Below, one piece after another: positions 24,020-41,229 of a stretch of 64,000 nt of DNA. The stretch covers positions 744,001-808,000 of the forward strand of contig JBBPEB010000026.1 of the NCBI GenBank assembly GCA_039096225.1, in the 5' to 3' direction. Both the position numbers and the translations under genes were made by a program. The stretch is from Blastocystis sp. Blastoise. Taxonomy: Eukaryota > Protista > Bigyra: Opalinata. Position 1 is the first letter of the stretch, and each line of letters begins with the position of its first letter. The notes beneath the pieces were generated by a model that was not told the DNA's origin, ran no database searches, and worked only from the letters and a program-made list of their open reading frames with translations.

Positions 24020-24091
24020 AGCAGCCAGGCGGGTTTGAACCACCGACCGCACGATCTGCAATCGTATGCTCTACCACTGAGCTATGGCTGC
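24020..24091 (-). tRNA. tRNA-Cys(GCA)
   Basis: Reverse complement GCAGCCATAGCTCAGTGGTAGAGCATACGATTGCAGATCGTGCGGTCGGTGGTTCAAACCCGCCTGGCTGCT folds as a cloverleaf with anticodon GCA, followed by a T-run terminator. Confidence 0.95.
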
Positions 24092-26994: not shown

Positions 26995-31825
<4,831 letters not shown>

Positions 31826-33720
31826 AAATGATACTTTAATAATAATAATATATATATAGGATACATTGGTTTTAAAATAATTATTTATATTATATTTTTT
31901 ATGATAGATTCTTTTTATTTTGTTAAAAATCTTTTATTTGATTTATATTTATAAATATATTTATTATAAAAAAATGTCTCAAAAATTTATTTTTTCTCTT
32001 TTCTGTTTCTTTCTTATTTCATATATTTTTATTGAATCTTTTTTTTTATTCATCTTTATGTTATTGAAACCAGCCATTTTTGTTTTGTTTTAATAAAAGC
32101 ATTTTTAGGTATATATATATTCAGTGCCTTCCCGAGTGTCTGTGACACTTGCGGCGACACTTTTGTGACACTTTTTTCAGCCATGCTTAATTCGGCTGAA
32201 TTCGATAAACTGAAGCCAGATTGTGATTTCTCTCACTGATAGGTACTTTTGACTATTTAAAGCTTTTTCATGGCTTATTTTTGCATAAGAACATTTTTAA
32301 TCAATAATAATTCAATAAATAAAAGACTTGAATACAAAAGAAGAATATTTCAGGAAAGTTTTATGTAGATTAATGATTTAGACTCAAAAAAACTATTAAG
32401 CATATTTTATCAATGAATTGACATCTTTATATTATTCTAAAGTGTTATACAATATCAAAAACGTTTCTGTTTCATTCTAAGTCGCCATTTTGACAATAAT
32501 GGGGTCAATATTTTAGAATTTTTTATAGCTCTGTTCAAAGTGAAAGACCTCTTAAATTCATAAACATGTGTAAAAGTGAATAAAATGACATCTATGAGTC
32601 AAAACGACAACCAAGTCAAAAAGTCAAAAAATTATTTTTTTACACTGAAAGAATGAACCGAGCCTATTTGTTTGGCTGAATAAAAGACCAGAGTTTTGAT
32701 TCTTTTGTATTTACGGGAATAATTTTCTTGTCCAAAACTGAGTCTGTTTATATTTTGTTATATATCAAAGCACAAAAAGATTTTAGAATAGTTTTTACAT
32801 TATATTTTAGTATAATTAAAGGTTCCGCATCAAAAACTTTTGTCAGAAGTTTAAACTAAGCAGTTATTTTTTAGTATCAAATAAAAGTCGTTTTAAAAGT
32901 TGCTATTAGAGTAATTTTATGTAATAGAAAAGCATTTGAAGTTGAAAACAGTAGTTTTTAGACGAGTATATAAACAGATCAGAAAGTCAAAGAAAATGAG
33001 TTATTTTTGAGAAGCTAAAAGTAGTGGGATACAATAGAATTGTGTAAATAATGTATTGTCTGACGCGTTAAAACTAATAATCTTAATAGAATATCTCAAA
33101 AAAAAACTGAAGAATAAAAAATGTATTTTTAAGAATATTTTTAGTATTTGACTGAAAGATTTGAATTTAAATATGAATACATTTTTATATTTAATTTGTT
33201 GTCTCTATGTAGAAATAGAACTTATTACGAGGACTATAGATGCTTTTAAGCAATCCTAATGCTGTGTAAGTATTTATTTATCTAATATATCATATTATTT
33301 TACATTATTCTTTTAGATTCCCCATTTTGGATTTCCTCTTCCTTTCAAACAGTCTCCTTGGTCTATTTCAAATACATTTATAACATGGAATCGTTGATTT
33401 GATTCTTATAAGGTATTTTATCTAATTCCTTTTTTAATTCATTTAGGTTTCTTGGTTATTATTGTCTATACCTCTTCCAAATAACAAATCAAAGCAATAT
33501 TGAAGGTATATAAATATATCTATTTGTTTCTTTATTACATTGACACATTTTCTCTTTTTTCTTTTTTCCTATTAAAATTATTTATTTAATTTTTATTTAT
33601 TTTATTTATGTTTTATATTTATCATCAATTTATATATTATATAGAAAATTTATTTCTTATTGCCATTCTTGAATTCTGTGCTTTTGTTTGCTAGTTAAAA
33701 ACGAAAATAACAAATTTTGT

Positions 33721-33777
<57 letters not shown>

Positions 33778-35113
33778 TCATCTATCTATCTATCTATCTA
33801 TCTATCTATTAGGGCATCCAATTGATATCTCCTACAGTATCAACGATTCCTTTGACTTCTACTACTATTACTCCTTCTGAATATCCTCTCTTCTTCACGA
33901 GTACTGCAGGATCTATATATCCACTTCAATTATTCCTTAATAGTCGATGTGGACAAATACCTATAGATATTGATCTCGAAAAACGAATTAAAATCACTTT
34001 TATTAGTGATCGAAAGGGTATATTTATTATTATATATATTTATTATTATTCTATATATATATAGTTCCATCTCTTCCTACATATACCTTCTCCTATCTTT
34101 CTTCTTCTTCTCTTTATTTATATTTAAAAGCTATCTATGTAGCTATATATGATATTTATATAACAGTAGATGGTATTCCTATTCATTATTCTCCATTTTT
34201 ATCTGCATGGACAGTAACTCATGGTTCTCTTCTTCCTTCAAATACTATTTTTATACCACCAAATAGAACTACTAGTGTTGGCATTATTCGTATATATTTA
34301 TTTAATTAATATTTATTTAATAATATATATATATATATAGATGATTTTGAAATATATTTTCGTGATGAATATAATAATACAGTTCCTACAACATTATTTA
34401 CAGGAACAATTCTATTAAATACAGATCAATCTTATTTCTTTACTTCAAAAGAAGGTATTTATTTATTTATTTATTTATTATTATTATTATTATATATATA
34501 TAGATCCATTACATGAAAAATTAATATATCAATTTGTTTCGTATACTTCAGAATCTGTTTATTTTAGATGGATGTATATATATATAAATATTTATATAAA
34601 TAATAATAATATTTTTATAGTGTGAATGGTTTATCTGTGATTAATACTCCATTCCAATTATCAGTATATAGTGATGTTCCTTCTTATCTCTACTCTTCTA
34701 TCTCTACTATCTATTCAATTATTCCTTTATATAGAAGTGTTGATGTATATATATAATAATAATAAAAATAAAAATAATATATATAGTTTACATTAATAGT
34801 AAGAGATCGTTATTATAATTTAGTGAATCAGAATAATTTTATAATAAAATTATATGTAACATCTTCAGAAGGATTTGATATTCCTTTATTTCCAGGGGAA
34901 TCCGATCAATTCTTTAGTTATAGAATCACTATGGATTCTACTTCACAATATACATTATCCATTCGTTTCTTTCGTGAGATTTCTAATGGTCATTTATATG
35001 TACGTCTTCTAAATCAAGAAGAAGAAGAAGATATTGATACAATTAATTCTTATATATATTGTACTATTCAAAGTAGAATTAGTCCTAATGATTGCTCGAA
35101 AACTGAAATCTAT

Positions 35114-35190
35114 ATATCCTTTTATTAGTTATTTTATATTATATTCTCTCAATAATAATATTATATATATTTCTTAATTCTACTTTTTAC
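35114..35190 (+). other. U12-type AT-AC intron
   Basis: Donor ATATCCTTT, branch-like TTCTTAAT at 35171, 3' end AC; splicing gives KTEIY|SPISFAG in frame. Confidence 0.88.
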
Positions 35191-36853
35191 AGTCCTATTA
35201 GTTTTGCAGGCACATTAACGTATATGTATATATATACAAGAGATATATATGATGATGGATATTGTTTAGATAATCGAAGAGATAAATATAAAGTGTATAT
35301 TAAAGGTGATGGAGAAGTATATATATATTTATTTAATATATTATTATTATATATAGTATACTCAGAAATCCTTTTATTCATTTTCAACATCTCCTTCTCT
35401 TGATATATATACACAAGAATATCAATATACTTCTATTTGTCCTCTTTATACATTTATTCAATTACCTTCAAAAGTTAGAAATATAACTGTGAAAATAGAT
35501 TGTTTATCTGAAGATAATATTTGGTCCTCTTTAGAATGGAATATCACTACTATACCTTCTACTGAAATGTATATTAATTATTATTATTCTCTTATATATA
35601 TATAGTACATCTACAATAAAAGTAACTCATGATTCTCTTTATACTGCTGGTGATATTATTCCTATAAACATCAAATTCTTTGATATGTAATTATTTATTA
35701 TTCTTTATTTATATATTATTTATAGATATAATAATTCAGTAATTAATTTACAAAGTGTGTATAAAATATGTGATTATAGTTATGTAGAAGGTATATTTAA
35801 ATATATATAATTTGAATATAATTTTATATAGATCGAAATACTTATTATGATGTTATGAATCCAGATTCAATAAGTCTTCTTAGTACATGTTCTATACCTG
35901 CTAAAGTATCAGGATTCCATAAGATTTCATTGATTACATTAGTTTCTGGAAATATCTATGATTCTTATCTAAGTAAATATATTTATATTTATAATATATA
36001 TTATCTATAATAGCTGTTGTTCCTGGTACTCTTTATATTGCTCATACTGATATTCATGGTACTGGAATTGAATTTGTTTCTTATTGTGATTCTACTAATA
36101 TTTCTATTTGTGGAGATATCTATATGAATTTAAAAGTATTTATTTATTATTATTATTATTATATATTTATAATAGGATGAATATTTTAATTCATTGAATG
36201 CTACATATTATATTGAAGAAGGTGGATATTCAAAAGAAGATCCTTCTTTTTCTATATATAATCATGAAGGAGAATATATTGATATAGATATTCGACGAGC
36301 TGATACTTTAGAAGATACTCCTTTCACTGTAGATAAACATATACTCAATAATACGTATATTTAATATTATTATTTATATTTATTATTTATTTATAGTATT
36401 CATATTCATTATATTGTTGAAATGTCTTCTATTATTGGTCTTACTGAATCAGAATATCCTTATTTATATATACGTCTATTCTTTCAAAATAAACAAGATA
36501 ATCTATTCTCTAAAGATATTCCTGTTACTCTATCTTCTCTTCCTTATTCTCTATTCATGTATATATATTTTTTATTATTATTTTCAATATCTGTATAGAT
36601 TAACATCTCCTCTTAAATTTCATGTATCATCGATATTAAATGTCAATTTAGAAACTGATCCATTCTTTTTATTTCAAATATTTGATGAAAATCAACATAT
36701 TATTACGGGTCAACAATCTAATCTTAAATGGTATTCTATTATTATTATTATATATAAATATAAATGAATATATATATATAGGATAAATATAGATGAAGAT
36801 TATTATGATGGAATCATGTATATAGTTGAAACTACATCACCTGGTACTTATAA

Positions 36854-36918
36854 ATATCCTTTTATATATATATATATTAATAATAATTAAACACTATTAT
36901 TTTCTTTAATCTATATAC
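36854..36918 (+). other. U12-type AT-AC intron
   Basis: Donor ATATCCTTT, branch-like TTCTTTAAT at about 36902, 3' end AC; splicing gives PGTYK|TIPHLP, in frame with the downstream ORF MPILDISV. Confidence 0.88.
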
Positions 36919-38050
36919 AACTATACCTCATCTTCCTACTGCTCGTAATTATACGTTTATATTATTATATAATAATATGCCTATATTGGATATATCAGTG
37001 ACAATTACTACATTCACATGTTTAAAGTATTCTTTATTATCAACCTATTCAGGAACATTCAGTATGGGATTTGTACCTGAAATAAGAAGAGAATTAGATG
37101 TTATTGTTAAAGATATTCATAATAATGAAATGTATATTTATTTTTATATATTATTATTTATTATTATATAGTCCTATTCCTATAAATCAACAATTCAATT
37201 TAACTTCTTCTCCTCCTCTTCTCTATTCTTATACTCTCAATAATAATCATATCCATGTATATATATAATCATATATAATTTATAATATTTATATAGTTTC
37301 TAATAGATTCTCCTCTTCATCTTTCTTCTTATCGAGATCTATATACTATTACTATTTCTACATCCTTTGAAGATCAACCCTATATAGAAATACTTACTAC
37401 TACTGCTTATGCTTATCCTAATTTGAGTATATATATAATATATAATATATAATAATATTATTATATAGATCTTCTTGGATCTCCTTCTTATTTACTTTGT
37501 CCTGATGAATTAACTACAGGAATAGAATTCAATTGTACATTTCATCCACGAGATATTTATGGTAATGATATTAACCCTACTTATATTCAACCATTCTTAA
37601 AATCAACATTGATTGATTCTAAGGGTAATAATCTCAATGTATGTGATTTACCTTATTGTACAGGGAATAAGCCAGCTATCTTTATTTTTGATCATAATAC
37701 TATTTATACAAAAATGTATTATATTGATGCTGATACATATACTATAACATTTTCTCTTGAACAAGTTCATTATGAACAACAATTTCAATTGATTATTTCT
37801 CCATCAATTATGGACCCTCAACAATCATTTATTCATTTCCCTTCGAATAATAATCCTATTCCTGTTCCTAATTATGAAGATTATGGAAAAAATGGTATTT
37901 ATTATTTATTTTTATTATTATTATATATATAGAATTATTAGATGATGAAGGAATTAATAAAAGTATATATTTATATTATTATAGTTATTATTTATATATA
38001 TAGCTTATATAGCTGGTAATCAAATTTTCATTCATGTTCATCTCTTTGAT

Positions 38051-38113
38051 ATATCTTTTATATTATTATTTATATATATTTTATAATATAAATATTTTTT
38101 TCTTAATAATCAC
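38051..38113 (+). other. U12-type AT-AC intron
   Basis: Donor ATATCTTT, branch-like TTCTTAAT at about 38100, 3' end CAC; splicing gives HLFD|SFNNTIEED in frame. Confidence 0.82.
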
Positions 38114-39155
38114 TCCTTTAATAATACAATAGAAGAAGATATATCAAAAGAATTATATATAGAAATATATAAGAATGAAACTCGTATAGAAACTGATAGG
38201 TATATATATTTATATTATTATTATAATTATTATATAGTTATGCAATATTAATTTATGGAAATGTATATGTATTTTCTTTATATCATATTATATTATATAT
38301 AGATAATAAATAGATCAGTTTTATTATTAACAGTATATACAAATGATTTTATATATATTATAGGACAACAACATTTTTATATAAAGGTATGTATTTATCT
38401 ATATATATATTTATTTAAATTATTCATAGTTTTATAATTAGTTTATATAGGATAGGAAAGAGTTTCCATATATATATTATAATGATTAATTTTTTACATA
38501 TTATCTATTATATTATTAAAATTGTACTATGTCATATTTAATTATAATATTCTTCTTGTTTGGTAGATATTTAGAATTAGTTGATTTACAGATATCTTTT
38601 CTAGTAGAGAATAATAAAATATAAATAATTCAACATTAGTTTTTTATAAAAATATAATCTTTATTATGTTAATGATAGGTTGTAAAACGTTTCAGATATT
38701 ATCTATTTTATTTATATATGTATAATAATCTATAATTGATTTAAATAAGACATGTTACACAAGAAATGTTTATAAATTGTGAATCTCATCTTAATAAATA
38801 ACTATACTGATTATATATTTTTATTCTGTATAAGATTTATATCTTAAGCAGAATGCTATTTTATTAATATAACTGACAAATATATTTAATTGAAATCATA
38901 GTGTGTTAAAATAGCACGGTTTTATCTCTGTAACATCTAAATATATATGTTGTAATTAAATAATTCATGCTAAAAACTATATAATATATTTATAAATTAA
39001 TTGATAATCAAATAGACTTTTTGTAAAGAAAAAGAGTAATTTTATAATTTTATTAACCTCTGAAAACAAAGAATTTTATATAGATTCTTATAATAGTAAT
39101 AATATATTGACTATTATAATTCAAAAATAAAACAATACATGTAAAAAAATAAAAA

Positions 39156-39228
39156 TGCCCCAGATAAGATTTGAACCAGCGACAATAACCATTATAACTA
39201 TAGCGCTGACCAACTATACCAACAATTC
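39156..39228 (-). ncRNA. Degenerate tRNA-like (A-box/B-box) element 1
   Basis: The reverse complement contains TGGTATAGTTGGT (A box) and GGTTCAAATC (B box) at tRNA spacing, then a T-run; the stems do not pair. Confidence 0.6.
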
Positions 39229-39511
39229 TCTCAATTTTTTGTTTTTATATAATATATATAATAAATTTAAATATAGCTAAATCTTCAAATTTTTATATTC
39301 ATTATCTTTCATAACATTTATGTCAGTATAGACATGCTTAGAATAACTATTAAATAGAAATTATTAATTTTTGAAAATAAATTGTCTATTGATGTGGTGA
39401 TAATGAACTCAAAAAGAACACCTCAGTGATGTAAACGTTTTTTAAATACTAAAAATGACGCAGAGTTGATTGAATCATTATAAATAGTTGTCAAAAAAAT
39501 TTAAAAGAAAA

Positions 39512-39583
39512 TGTCCCCTATAAGGATCGATCCGTCGACCATGTAAAAATTTTATGCGCATAAACCATTCGACCAAATACCCC
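39512..39583 (-). ncRNA. Degenerate tRNA-like (A-box/B-box) element 2
   Basis: The reverse complement contains TGGTCGAATGGT (A box) and GGATCGATCC (B-box variant), then TTTT; the acceptor stem is unpaired. Confidence 0.5.
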
Positions 39584-41229
39584 TTATATAATATTTATCA
39601 TCAAGTCATATAATAATTATAAAACCAGTGACTACTAACCTTTTTTTATTTTTCCCTTTTTAAACATAAAAATAATATATTTTACAATATAAATATTATA
39701 AATGTGTTGTGTGACTTATTCTACATGTAAAATACATTTTAAAACCATTTTTAAAGGCTATTAAAAAACATTTTGTCTGAAGTATTGTTTTTTAAAATCT
39801 GACTTTTGTTCATACTGTTGTTTTTTGTTTGGTTTTTGAAAATAATTATTTTAATATGCTTTTCGTTTATTTTTTTTTATTACTAGTCAGGGTGTATCTG
39901 TAGAGTCCCTACAAGACTACTTCGTGATATTTAACAAAAACAAAAACTTTTTAATTACATTATTATTTTTTATAATATTATTTTAGAGTTTATTGACAAT
40001 ATTATTCATTATAACACATAAATAATACTATTTGAAATAGCTTAAAAAAAGTATATAAACAATTGACTATTGTCACAAAATATTTTTATTTGTCACCCAA
40101 CTTAACACGAATAGTCAAACATAGGAATCATACTTGTTGTTATTTGATGACTTATATACTTTTCAGTCATGTATCTGTCACAACATGTGTCACAAAAAAT
40201 ATTTTATTTGACTTATTTTCAAATAGTCATACATTATATATCAAAATAATACGTTTTTAGTCAAAAACTGTCACGTCATAATATAATAGTCAATGAATGA
40301 ATTATCTTTTTTATGTCACCCGGTCCTTTTTTCATGAAAAGTGTGTAAATCGACGTGTCTTGATGAGCTGAGTTTGAAAATATTTTTTTTATATTTTTAA
40401 AATTAAAAACAAAAAAGTTATTTATCATTTTTCATTTTTGTGTCACAAATTTTGCTGACAATTGCGACGCCGCAAAAAAAAAGGGCCTTTTGGAAGTCGC
40501 TGTATATATTATTATTGCATTCAACAAAAAGAATGAAACCTATAAGTTATTTTCTTTTAATCGATAACAAATTATGTATTTGTTTTCAAAATATACATGC
40601 AATATACAAAAAAAAAAATAACATTTTTGAAAAAAATAACTATCATCTATTATTTAAATTATACTATTCTGTAGTATTCATTAACTTTCATTTTATTTAA
40701 TCTATATTTTAAGAGATATTTTAATAAAAAGACAATTAAAATGAAGAAATTTATTATATTTAACATCATTAAATGCAAATCAGAAGGTCATTCGATAGAA
40801 TGAAATGCGACAAAAGTGTTTCAAAGATAATGGATTCAATAAGATCTATTATATGGTTATAAAAGAGAAATGATACATTTTATTCTATTCTTTATTTTTA
40901 ATTATAATATAAATATATACTTATTGACTATACATTCCTTGAGCATATAAATCTAGTTATTATAAGACCATTCAAACAAATTAATTCCAACTTTCAACCG
41001 ATTTCCAAACTGAATAACAGTAATACATACGAGATATTGAATATTTATATCAGAAAATTGCTTGTTATAATAAAAACATCAGTGAAAATGGTCTTATGAG
41101 TGTTTTCTTTATTGAGAAAATAATCCAAATTATTCGGATAAAAAATGAACTAGAAACAGCATTCAACCTAAGATATTTCTACACATTTACGTTGTAATTC
41201 TTCTTAAATTACGATATCATCCTTTGAAG

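What the first reader, a model, noticed from the sequence alone, without database searches (positions are those of the whole stretch)
32122..40502. 8.4-kb cargo-carrying (Pack-type) hAT-like element between MCM6 and a surface-protein gene
Seen: both ends start CAG when read inward (CAGTGCCTTCC vs CAGCGACTTCC) and share TTGCGGCG and TTTGTGACAC blocks within about 60 bp. The same 8-mer, TATATATT, abuts each end. The interior has no transposase but holds a 5-kb intron-rich gene and two tRNA-like modules. Known: 8-bp target duplications, short (C/T)AG-starting TIRs and subterminal repeats define the hAT superfamily. Inference: a non-autonomous element that captured genomic DNA and could act as a gene-duplicating vehicle for Ig-repeat genes in this protist. 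Caveat: the TSD is low-complexity in an AT-rich genome, and the TIRs are imperfect.
Basis: partly seen in the sequence, partly recalled or inferred. Interest (0 to 1): 0.88.

Follow-up and report, generated by a model that had tools for sequence, protein, structure and literature searches.

The report
Gene-carrying hAT transposon in tortoise Blastocystis
A recently multiplied cut-and-paste transposon in a tortoise gut protist carries a 4.5-kb slice of a giant surface-protein gene (behaviour already known in plants and animals), and its otherwise identical copies differ by cleanly missing introns, which is either intron loss caught in the act or, slightly more likely, an assembly-polishing error.

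Summary
Confirmed. Window 32122-40502 is a real non-autonomous hAT-type transposon of Blastocystis sp. Blastoise (Rus-B). Six copies on five contigs share both ends, each with its own perfect 8-bp target duplication. The interior is a mosaic: a CACTA-family left arm with small exons, a 1,135-codon open internal slice of a multicopy filamin/GEX2-like Ig-repeat gene (three AT-AC introns), a CACTA-linked 3' piece, and a hAT-family right arm that holds the two tRNA-like modules. Relatives with the same ends carry other cargo, and a 193-bp MITE family shares the ends. The slice was probably captured inside a Pack-CACTA that the hAT ends now move. Five copies with zero substitutions in about 6 kb compared differ by six exactly excised introns (four seen directly, two inferred); a sixth copy lacks four more. 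These losses scale with copy number, not age, and neighbouring MCM6 carries a footprint of spliced reads. Artefact (about 50%) versus a real RNA-templated burst (about 40%) stays open without raw long reads. Pack-hATs are known. The scan already noted a sister copy of this element (s1-725999) and similar intron losses elsewhere in this genome.

The parts
32114..32121 (+). left copy of 8-bp target-site duplication TATATATT
32122..32233 (+). hAT-type left end: imperfect 11-bp TIR plus two subterminal TGTCAC motifs
   Evidence: identical in 6 copies, 78-87% in 26 more loci
32234..33809 (+). CACTA-family left arm (starts CACTG): about 1 kb upstream region, then four small exons from 33240 and an intron ending in (TA)n/(TCTA)n that is joined to the cargo
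   Evidence: 72-78% to at least 24 loci, most of which start at CACTA/CACTG with unrelated flanks; 60 terminal-motif hits vs 0 control; NCBI model P0009 of the C26 copy splices these exons into the cargo
33810..38283 (+). captured internal slice of a giant filamin/GEX2-type Ig-repeat gene; 1,135 open codons, 23 introns here, 25 in the fullest copy
   Evidence: donor copies continue in frame past the 3' breakpoint
35114..35190 (+). AT-AC (U12-type) intron a, predicted
   Evidence: ATATCCTTT start, branch-point-like TTTCTTAAT, keeps the frame; NCBI models use a GT-AG alternative, so unconfirmed
36854..36918 (+). AT-AC intron b; inferred to be exactly absent from one C13 copy
   Evidence: length bookkeeping and BLAST break; P0011 reads across it
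38051..38113 (+). AT-AC intron c
   Evidence: spliced in three NCBI models; an AT-AC-type donor sits at the same position in outgroup L061
37257..37713 (+). cluster of variable introns: 37257-37296, 37427-37468, and two absent from this copy (45 nt after 37609, 41 nt after 37712)
   Evidence: exact GT-AG junctions in copies with no substitutions
38284..39144 (+). 3' piece after the capture breakpoint; 38600-39100 is related to sequence found 5-8 kb downstream of other CACTA left arms
   Evidence: 71-75% hits at C5, C8 and C15, same strand as CACTA left ends
39156..39226 (-). tRNA-like A-box/B-box module 1 followed by a T-run
   Evidence: conserved in right-arm relatives; no ARAGORN or Rfam call; fold z 0.15
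39512..39583 (-). tRNA-like module 2
   Evidence: z -1.04
39145..40502 (+). hAT-family right arm with seven TGTCAC motifs and right TIR
   Evidence: 82-86% to 24 held loci; L037 and L039 end in the identical TIR
40503..40510 (+). right copy of the TSD

Best explanation
A non-autonomous Pack-type hAT transposon that moves as one 8.4-kb unit by cut-and-paste, using a hAT transposase supplied in trans. Shown: six dispersed copies, identical ends, a distinct 8-bp TSD each, no transposase inside. Inferred: enzyme in trans. Inferred build order: a CACTA-type element sat just inside the hAT left end; a 4.5-kb slice of a host Ig-repeat gene was copied into it at DNA level (introns kept; the 5' junction lies in a TA-rich intron, suggesting template switching during gap repair); the CACTA right end was lost; the hAT ends then amplified the composite. 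The CACTA arm probably supplies promoter and leader exons for a chimeric transcript. The exact intron differences between copies need spliced RNA as template. Whether that happened in the cell or in the polishing software is unresolved (see rivals).
For: TSDs and ends. Same-end relatives of about 16-31 kb with other cargo and at least 19 MITEs of 193 bp. About 19 near-identical hAT ORFs of up to 888 codons, at least 17 of them in elements with 17 distinct insertion flanks, so hAT activity is recent. CACTA termini, and a CACTA-linked 3' piece on the far side of the cargo. Nine or more donor copies at 92-97% without the ends, seven of which continue in frame beyond the 3' breakpoint. Run X1 holds 0.48 of the cargo words, close to the 0.50 expected for spliced RNA.
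Against: No transposase bounded by these exact TIRs was identified. The CACTA right end and its 3-bp TSD were not seen, so the order of nesting is inferred. The donor copies may themselves be carried by another element.
Confidence: 0.9

Rival explanations
1. Intron differences, reading A: an in-silico artefact. Spliced RNA-seq reads entered short-read polishing and deleted a few percent of short introns per copy.
For: Losses follow copy number, not age: 3 among 17 giant-hAT copies that differ by 2 substitutions versus none among four relatives 4-7% apart. One 34-nt intron is missing in 3 of 5 CACTA copies against a tree supported by 18 and 14 sites. The MCM6 intron 29599-29763 begins AT, and its first six bases equal those of the next exon; only 1 of 103 canonical introns has such a run of 5 or more. 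[quoted passage not shown]
Against: The methods name Illumina DNA for Polypolish. MCM6 and other single-copy genes keep many short introns that a 150-nt read could bridge, including one next to the odd donor (rough models). One lost intron is 100-138 nt in its closest relatives. The MCM6 footprint is a single case, and my search for odd donors was conditioned on such a match.
Confidence: 0.5
2. Intron differences, reading B: real and very recent. Reverse-transcribed spliced cargo RNA recombines with the genomic copies, helped by transposase-made breaks, in a burst that coincides with the present transposon and retroelement expansion.
For: Every junction is exact, including an AT-AC intron. Neighbouring introns go together (4 in C26; 2 each in C13a, C13b, C17 and L045). 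All six losses in the five young copies lie in the 3' third. The intronless junction after 37609 occurs only in four element copies, in none of the donors, and those four share a T-run state not seen in C20 or C26. Outgroup L061 holds three of the introns, so they are losses. The genome has 20 RT matches over the cut-off, most in long open frames up to 2,787 codons, 10 of them with the same score.
Against: A steady process at this rate would have stripped the older relatives, which it has not, so a recent jump of 100-fold or more must be assumed. T-run characters are homoplastic in the 17-copy family. It does not easily explain a broken donor in essential MCM6.
Confidence: 0.4
3. Intron differences, reading C: one or a few old intron-poor copies, spread in patches by DNA gene conversion or by long-read consensus mixing among identical copies.
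For: CACTA copies are mosaics with conflicting splits. The C26 cargo is several times more diverged than its arms (13 substitutions in about 880 exon bases versus about 5 in 1.7 kb).
Against: Conversion from donors at 92-97% identity would import substitutions, and none are seen. It still needs an exact intron-poor template with zero substitutions.
Confidence: 0.1
4. The ends are two unrelated short elements flanking a resident gene, or a segmental duplication.
For: A 193-bp MITE family with the same termini exists.
Against: Six copies share the whole interior with sharp ends and six different TSDs.
Confidence: 0.01

Closest known systems
Pack-hAT / Pack-TYPE transposons of maize and rice (Gisby and Catoni 2022, PMC8903248)
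   Same: Non-autonomous TIR element with TSD and captured coding DNA; relatives with the same ends and other cargo; DNA from more than one source.
   Different: Found in a stramenopile gut protist; 8.4 kb with a 1,135-codon open slice; contains the arm of a second superfamily (CACTA).
Multicopy Pack-TIRs of animals: hAT-N8_XT carrying CAPSL sequence, and Ssk-FB4 (Tan et al. 2021, PMC8277862)
   Same: Repeated transposition shown by distinct TSDs; copies far from the donor; chimeric transcripts likely.
   Different: Cargo far longer than the 291 bp of the frog case; copy-specific exact intron differences.
Pack-CACTA of Arabidopsis (described in PMC8903248)
   Same: CACTA/CACTG-ended arm whose relatives carry different cargo downstream.
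   Different: Here the CACTA right end is missing and mobility rests on the hAT ends.
Intron loss in CACTA transposases (PMC4158355) and recurrent intron loss in grasses (PMC4256211); titles and abstracts only
   Same: Intron loss in DNA-transposon genes; repeated loss of the same intron.
   Different: Those compare families or species; here losses would outrun point substitutions among identical copies.

Membership tests
hAT superfamily (non-autonomous) | 8-bp target-site duplication | tested here: met
   6 of 6 copies, all different
hAT superfamily (non-autonomous) | short TIRs starting YARNG (consensus from own knowledge) | tested here: met
   CAGTG and CAGCG; 9 of 11 complementary; the P-element consensus CANRG is not met
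hAT superfamily (non-autonomous) | subterminal repeats at both ends | tested here: met
   TGTCAC twice left, seven times right, inward-oriented
hAT superfamily (non-autonomous) | cognate hAT transposase bounded by the same ends | tested here: inconclusive
   32 PF05699 hits in the genome; the largest family has another TIR (CAGGGTGTGCC) and carries a relative of this element nested inside; none shown between these TIRs; 29 rows were not listed
hAT superfamily (non-autonomous) | empty pre-insertion site or excision footprint | not testable with these tools
Pack-TYPE / Pack-TIR | no transposase; host gene sequence between the ends | tested here: met
Pack-TYPE / Pack-TIR | donor copy elsewhere without the element's ends | tested here: met
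   nine or more copies at 92-97%; seven continue in frame past the 3' breakpoint; whether they are resident genes is not shown
Pack-TYPE / Pack-TIR | capture at DNA level (introns kept) | tested here: met
   25 introns in the fullest copy; three at outgroup positions
CACTA (inner arm) | termini CACTA/CACTG | tested here: met
   three opposed pairs 12-13 kb apart
CACTA (inner arm) | both TIRs present in this element | tested here: not met
   no convincing right TIR inside 32122-40502, so it is a remnant here
CACTA (inner arm) | 2-3-bp TSD and linked Transposase_21 | tested here: inconclusive
   4 PF02992 hits, none inside the paired ends; right-end flanks not held
tRNA gene | cloverleaf recognised by ARAGORN or Rfam | tested here: not met
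   only A/B boxes and a T-run
U12-type AT-AC introns | ATATCCTT donor, branch point, AC end, spliced | tested here: inconclusive
   motifs and frame fit for all three (c has the variant donor ATATCTTT); splicing supported for c by NCBI models and for b only by its exact absence in one copy; common in Blastocystis (PMC10639083)

The most novel reading that the evidence does not exclude
The copy-specific intron losses are real. In this protist, spliced RNA is written back into genomic copies so often that introns, minor AT-AC ones included, vanish faster than point mutations arise, in a recent burst tied to intact retroelements and transposase-made breaks. Families of identical transposon copies would then be a natural experiment on how introns are lost.
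Probability: 0.38. Interest if true: 0.85.

Novelty: new member of a known kind. Interest (0 to 1): 0.5.

Why it matters
As an element it extends Pack-type gene-fragment capture to a stramenopile gut protist (I found no such report; the genome paper mentions transposons only as a genome fraction). It also shows nesting of three layers: a CACTA arm in a hAT shell, and relatives inside giant autonomous hATs. The intron differences matter either way. If real, they make the long-standing question of how introns are lost (cDNA recombination versus deletion) testable among identical copies. If artefactual, the public Rus-B assembly has RNA-induced deletions and altered splice sites, which would undercut many intron-level observations on this genome.

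Tried and rejected
Two separate short elements, or a segmental duplication: rejected by six distinct TSDs. Helitron reading of the inner arm (TC start): rejected, because relatives start at CACTA/CACTG and have opposed partners. Intron gain: rejected for three introns by outgroup L061, and for a fourth by donors and C20. tRNA genes: no ARAGORN or Rfam support. Pfam on single exons and on P0001/P0002 gave nothing significant; the filamin/GEX2 label rests on language-model neighbours at 0.92-0.94 and a weak hit to a filamin-repeat protein. The search for homologous proteins found nothing outside this genome. The look-up of encoding contigs gave no independent DNA contig of the cargo.

Full report
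Source. NCBI names on proteins identical to the cargo give Blastocystis sp. Blastoise. Size and GC fit isolate Rus-B of Lind et al. 2025 (33.3 Mb, 23% GC; PMC12129017). The window is contig C17:744001-808000.

Observation. The termini, the shared blocks and the flanking TATATATT are at the stated positions. The element lies between MCM6 (PF00493) and a gene with an Ig domain (PF05345). Searches with both ends and the middle found six copies at 98-100% identity: C17 8,381 bp, C20 8,465, C23 8,422, C13 8,343 and 8,269, and C26 16,868 with two nested insertions. Each has its own perfect 8-bp duplication.

Family. The left end has 26 further relatives at 78-87%. Several pair with right arms to give elements of about 16, 19, 24 and 31 kb whose sequence next to the right arm differs from ours. 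At least 19 MITEs of 193 bp share the termini. About 19 near-identical hAT ORFs of up to 888 codons lie 12-13 kb from relatives of the right arm. Those are elements of 16 kb or more with another TIR; 17 distinct insertion flanks were seen, and they carry an 8.8-kb relative of our element that has lost its right TIR. No transposase bounded by our TIRs was found, so the partner enzyme is unidentified.

Interior. At 32234 a different repeat begins. Its relatives start at CACTA/CACTG with unrelated flanks, give 60 terminal hits against 0 in the control, and form opposed pairs 12-13 kb apart. It holds about 1 kb of upstream sequence and four small exons. The cargo, 33810-38283, is an open slice of 1,135 codons with three AT-AC introns. 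Nine or more donor copies at 92-97% lack the ends, and seven continue in frame past the 3' breakpoint. A homologue in a Logan contig (L061, 38% GC, about 30-nt introns, so probably another Blastocystis; inference) also extends on both sides. Its nearest language-model neighbours are filamin/GEX2 Ig-repeat proteins. Sequence at 38600-39100 recurs 5-8 kb downstream of three other CACTA left arms, so the cargo sits between two CACTA-linked pieces. I infer that a Pack-CACTA made the capture and lost its right end, and that the hAT ends now move the whole (about 70%). NCBI's model of the C26 copy splices the CACTA exons into the cargo (P0009), and run X1 holds the share of words expected of spliced RNA (0.48 vs 0.50). 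A chimeric transcript is therefore likely but was not seen directly. The two tRNA-like modules lie antisense in the family's right arm, keep A/B boxes and a T-run in relatives, and are not tRNAs. A polymerase III or boundary role is a guess.

Intron differences. Over about 6 kb compared, the five young copies show no substitutions (the two apparent ones are a T-run shift), yet differ by exact GT-AG introns of 40, 42, 45 and 41 nt. One C13 copy is inferred from lengths and from P0011 to lack a 51-nt intron and the 65-nt AT-AC intron as well. C26 lacks four consecutive introns. The outgroup holds three of these introns, so they are losses. The same is seen in the giant hATs (3 losses) and in the CACTA copies. 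Exact excision needs spliced RNA as template, in the cell or in software.

For a real process: co-loss of neighbours, 3' clustering, one junction confined to four copies that share a T-run state, many RT genes with long open frames, and retention of bridgeable short introns in single-copy genes. For an artefact: three losses against two substitutions in 17 copies, but none among relatives 4-7% apart, where a steady rate predicts tens per intron; one intron missing three times against a well-supported tree; an AT-AG intron in MCM6 whose first six bases copy the next exon; and methods wording that leaves room for RNA reads in polishing. Unchecked scan notes report more odd splice ends in housekeeping genes. 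I put artefact at about 0.5, a real recent burst at about 0.4, and conversion or read mixing at about 0.1.

Known kinds. Pack-hATs are described in maize (PMC8903248) and multicopy hAT Pack-TIRs in frog (PMC8277862). AT-AC introns are common in Blastocystis (PMC10639083). The element is a new member of a known kind. The scan had already followed up a sister copy (s1-725999).

Limits. My own spliced model was searched exon by exon by reference; the joined model was not sent to any database search and was used only inside scripts against sequences already held. NCBI's own models were searched by protein id. Gene models of single-copy neighbours are rough.

Noticed in passing
window 29599-29763: MCM6 intron with AT...AG ends whose first six bases equal those of the next exon; no GT-AG placement keeps the conserved KSQFLK motif. 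Looks like a spliced-read polishing footprint.
   Followed up: partly
L044-L060 (e.g. C33:553.5-569 kb): About 17-19 near-identical autonomous hATs of 16 kb or more (TIR CAGGGTGTGCC, ORF about 873 codons) carrying a nested 8.8-kb relative of this element; L045 and L051 lack exact introns of 36+78 and 63 nt.
   Followed up: partly
genome-wide, e.g. C2:66655-66847, C15:684734-684926: 193-bp MITE family with the same termini, at least 19 copies.
   Followed up: no
C10, C13, C14, C15, C29: RT-bearing open frames up to 2,787 codons, several in tandem at about 8.5-kb spacing with identical scores; probably a recently amplified site-specific non-LTR retroelement.
   Followed up: no
L007/L008 863-1506: Older (about 80%) version of the hAT-end plus CACTA-arm junction, interrupted by a 530-bp element with 200-bp inverted ends and nested in another giant hAT.
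   Followed up: partly
C26:1083097-1099964: Sixth copy carries insertions of about 2.9 kb (inside AT-AC intron a) and 5.7 kb (right arm); its cargo is several times more diverged than its arms.
   Followed up: partly
L009-L030: CACTA family with a shared left arm and leader exons but different downstream cargo by subfamily; copies are mosaic and show exact intron losses of 34, 42, 47, 63 and probably over 100 nt.
   Followed up: partly
window 24020-24091 (-); L047 3899-3971: tRNA-Cys in the window; tRNA-Gly in a flank of a giant hAT.
   Followed up: no
C23:636.5-639.9 kb: Another locus with CACTA leader exons about 2 kb upstream of the later part of the same Ig-repeat gene (P0002), suggesting a second, separate capture.
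   Followed up: no
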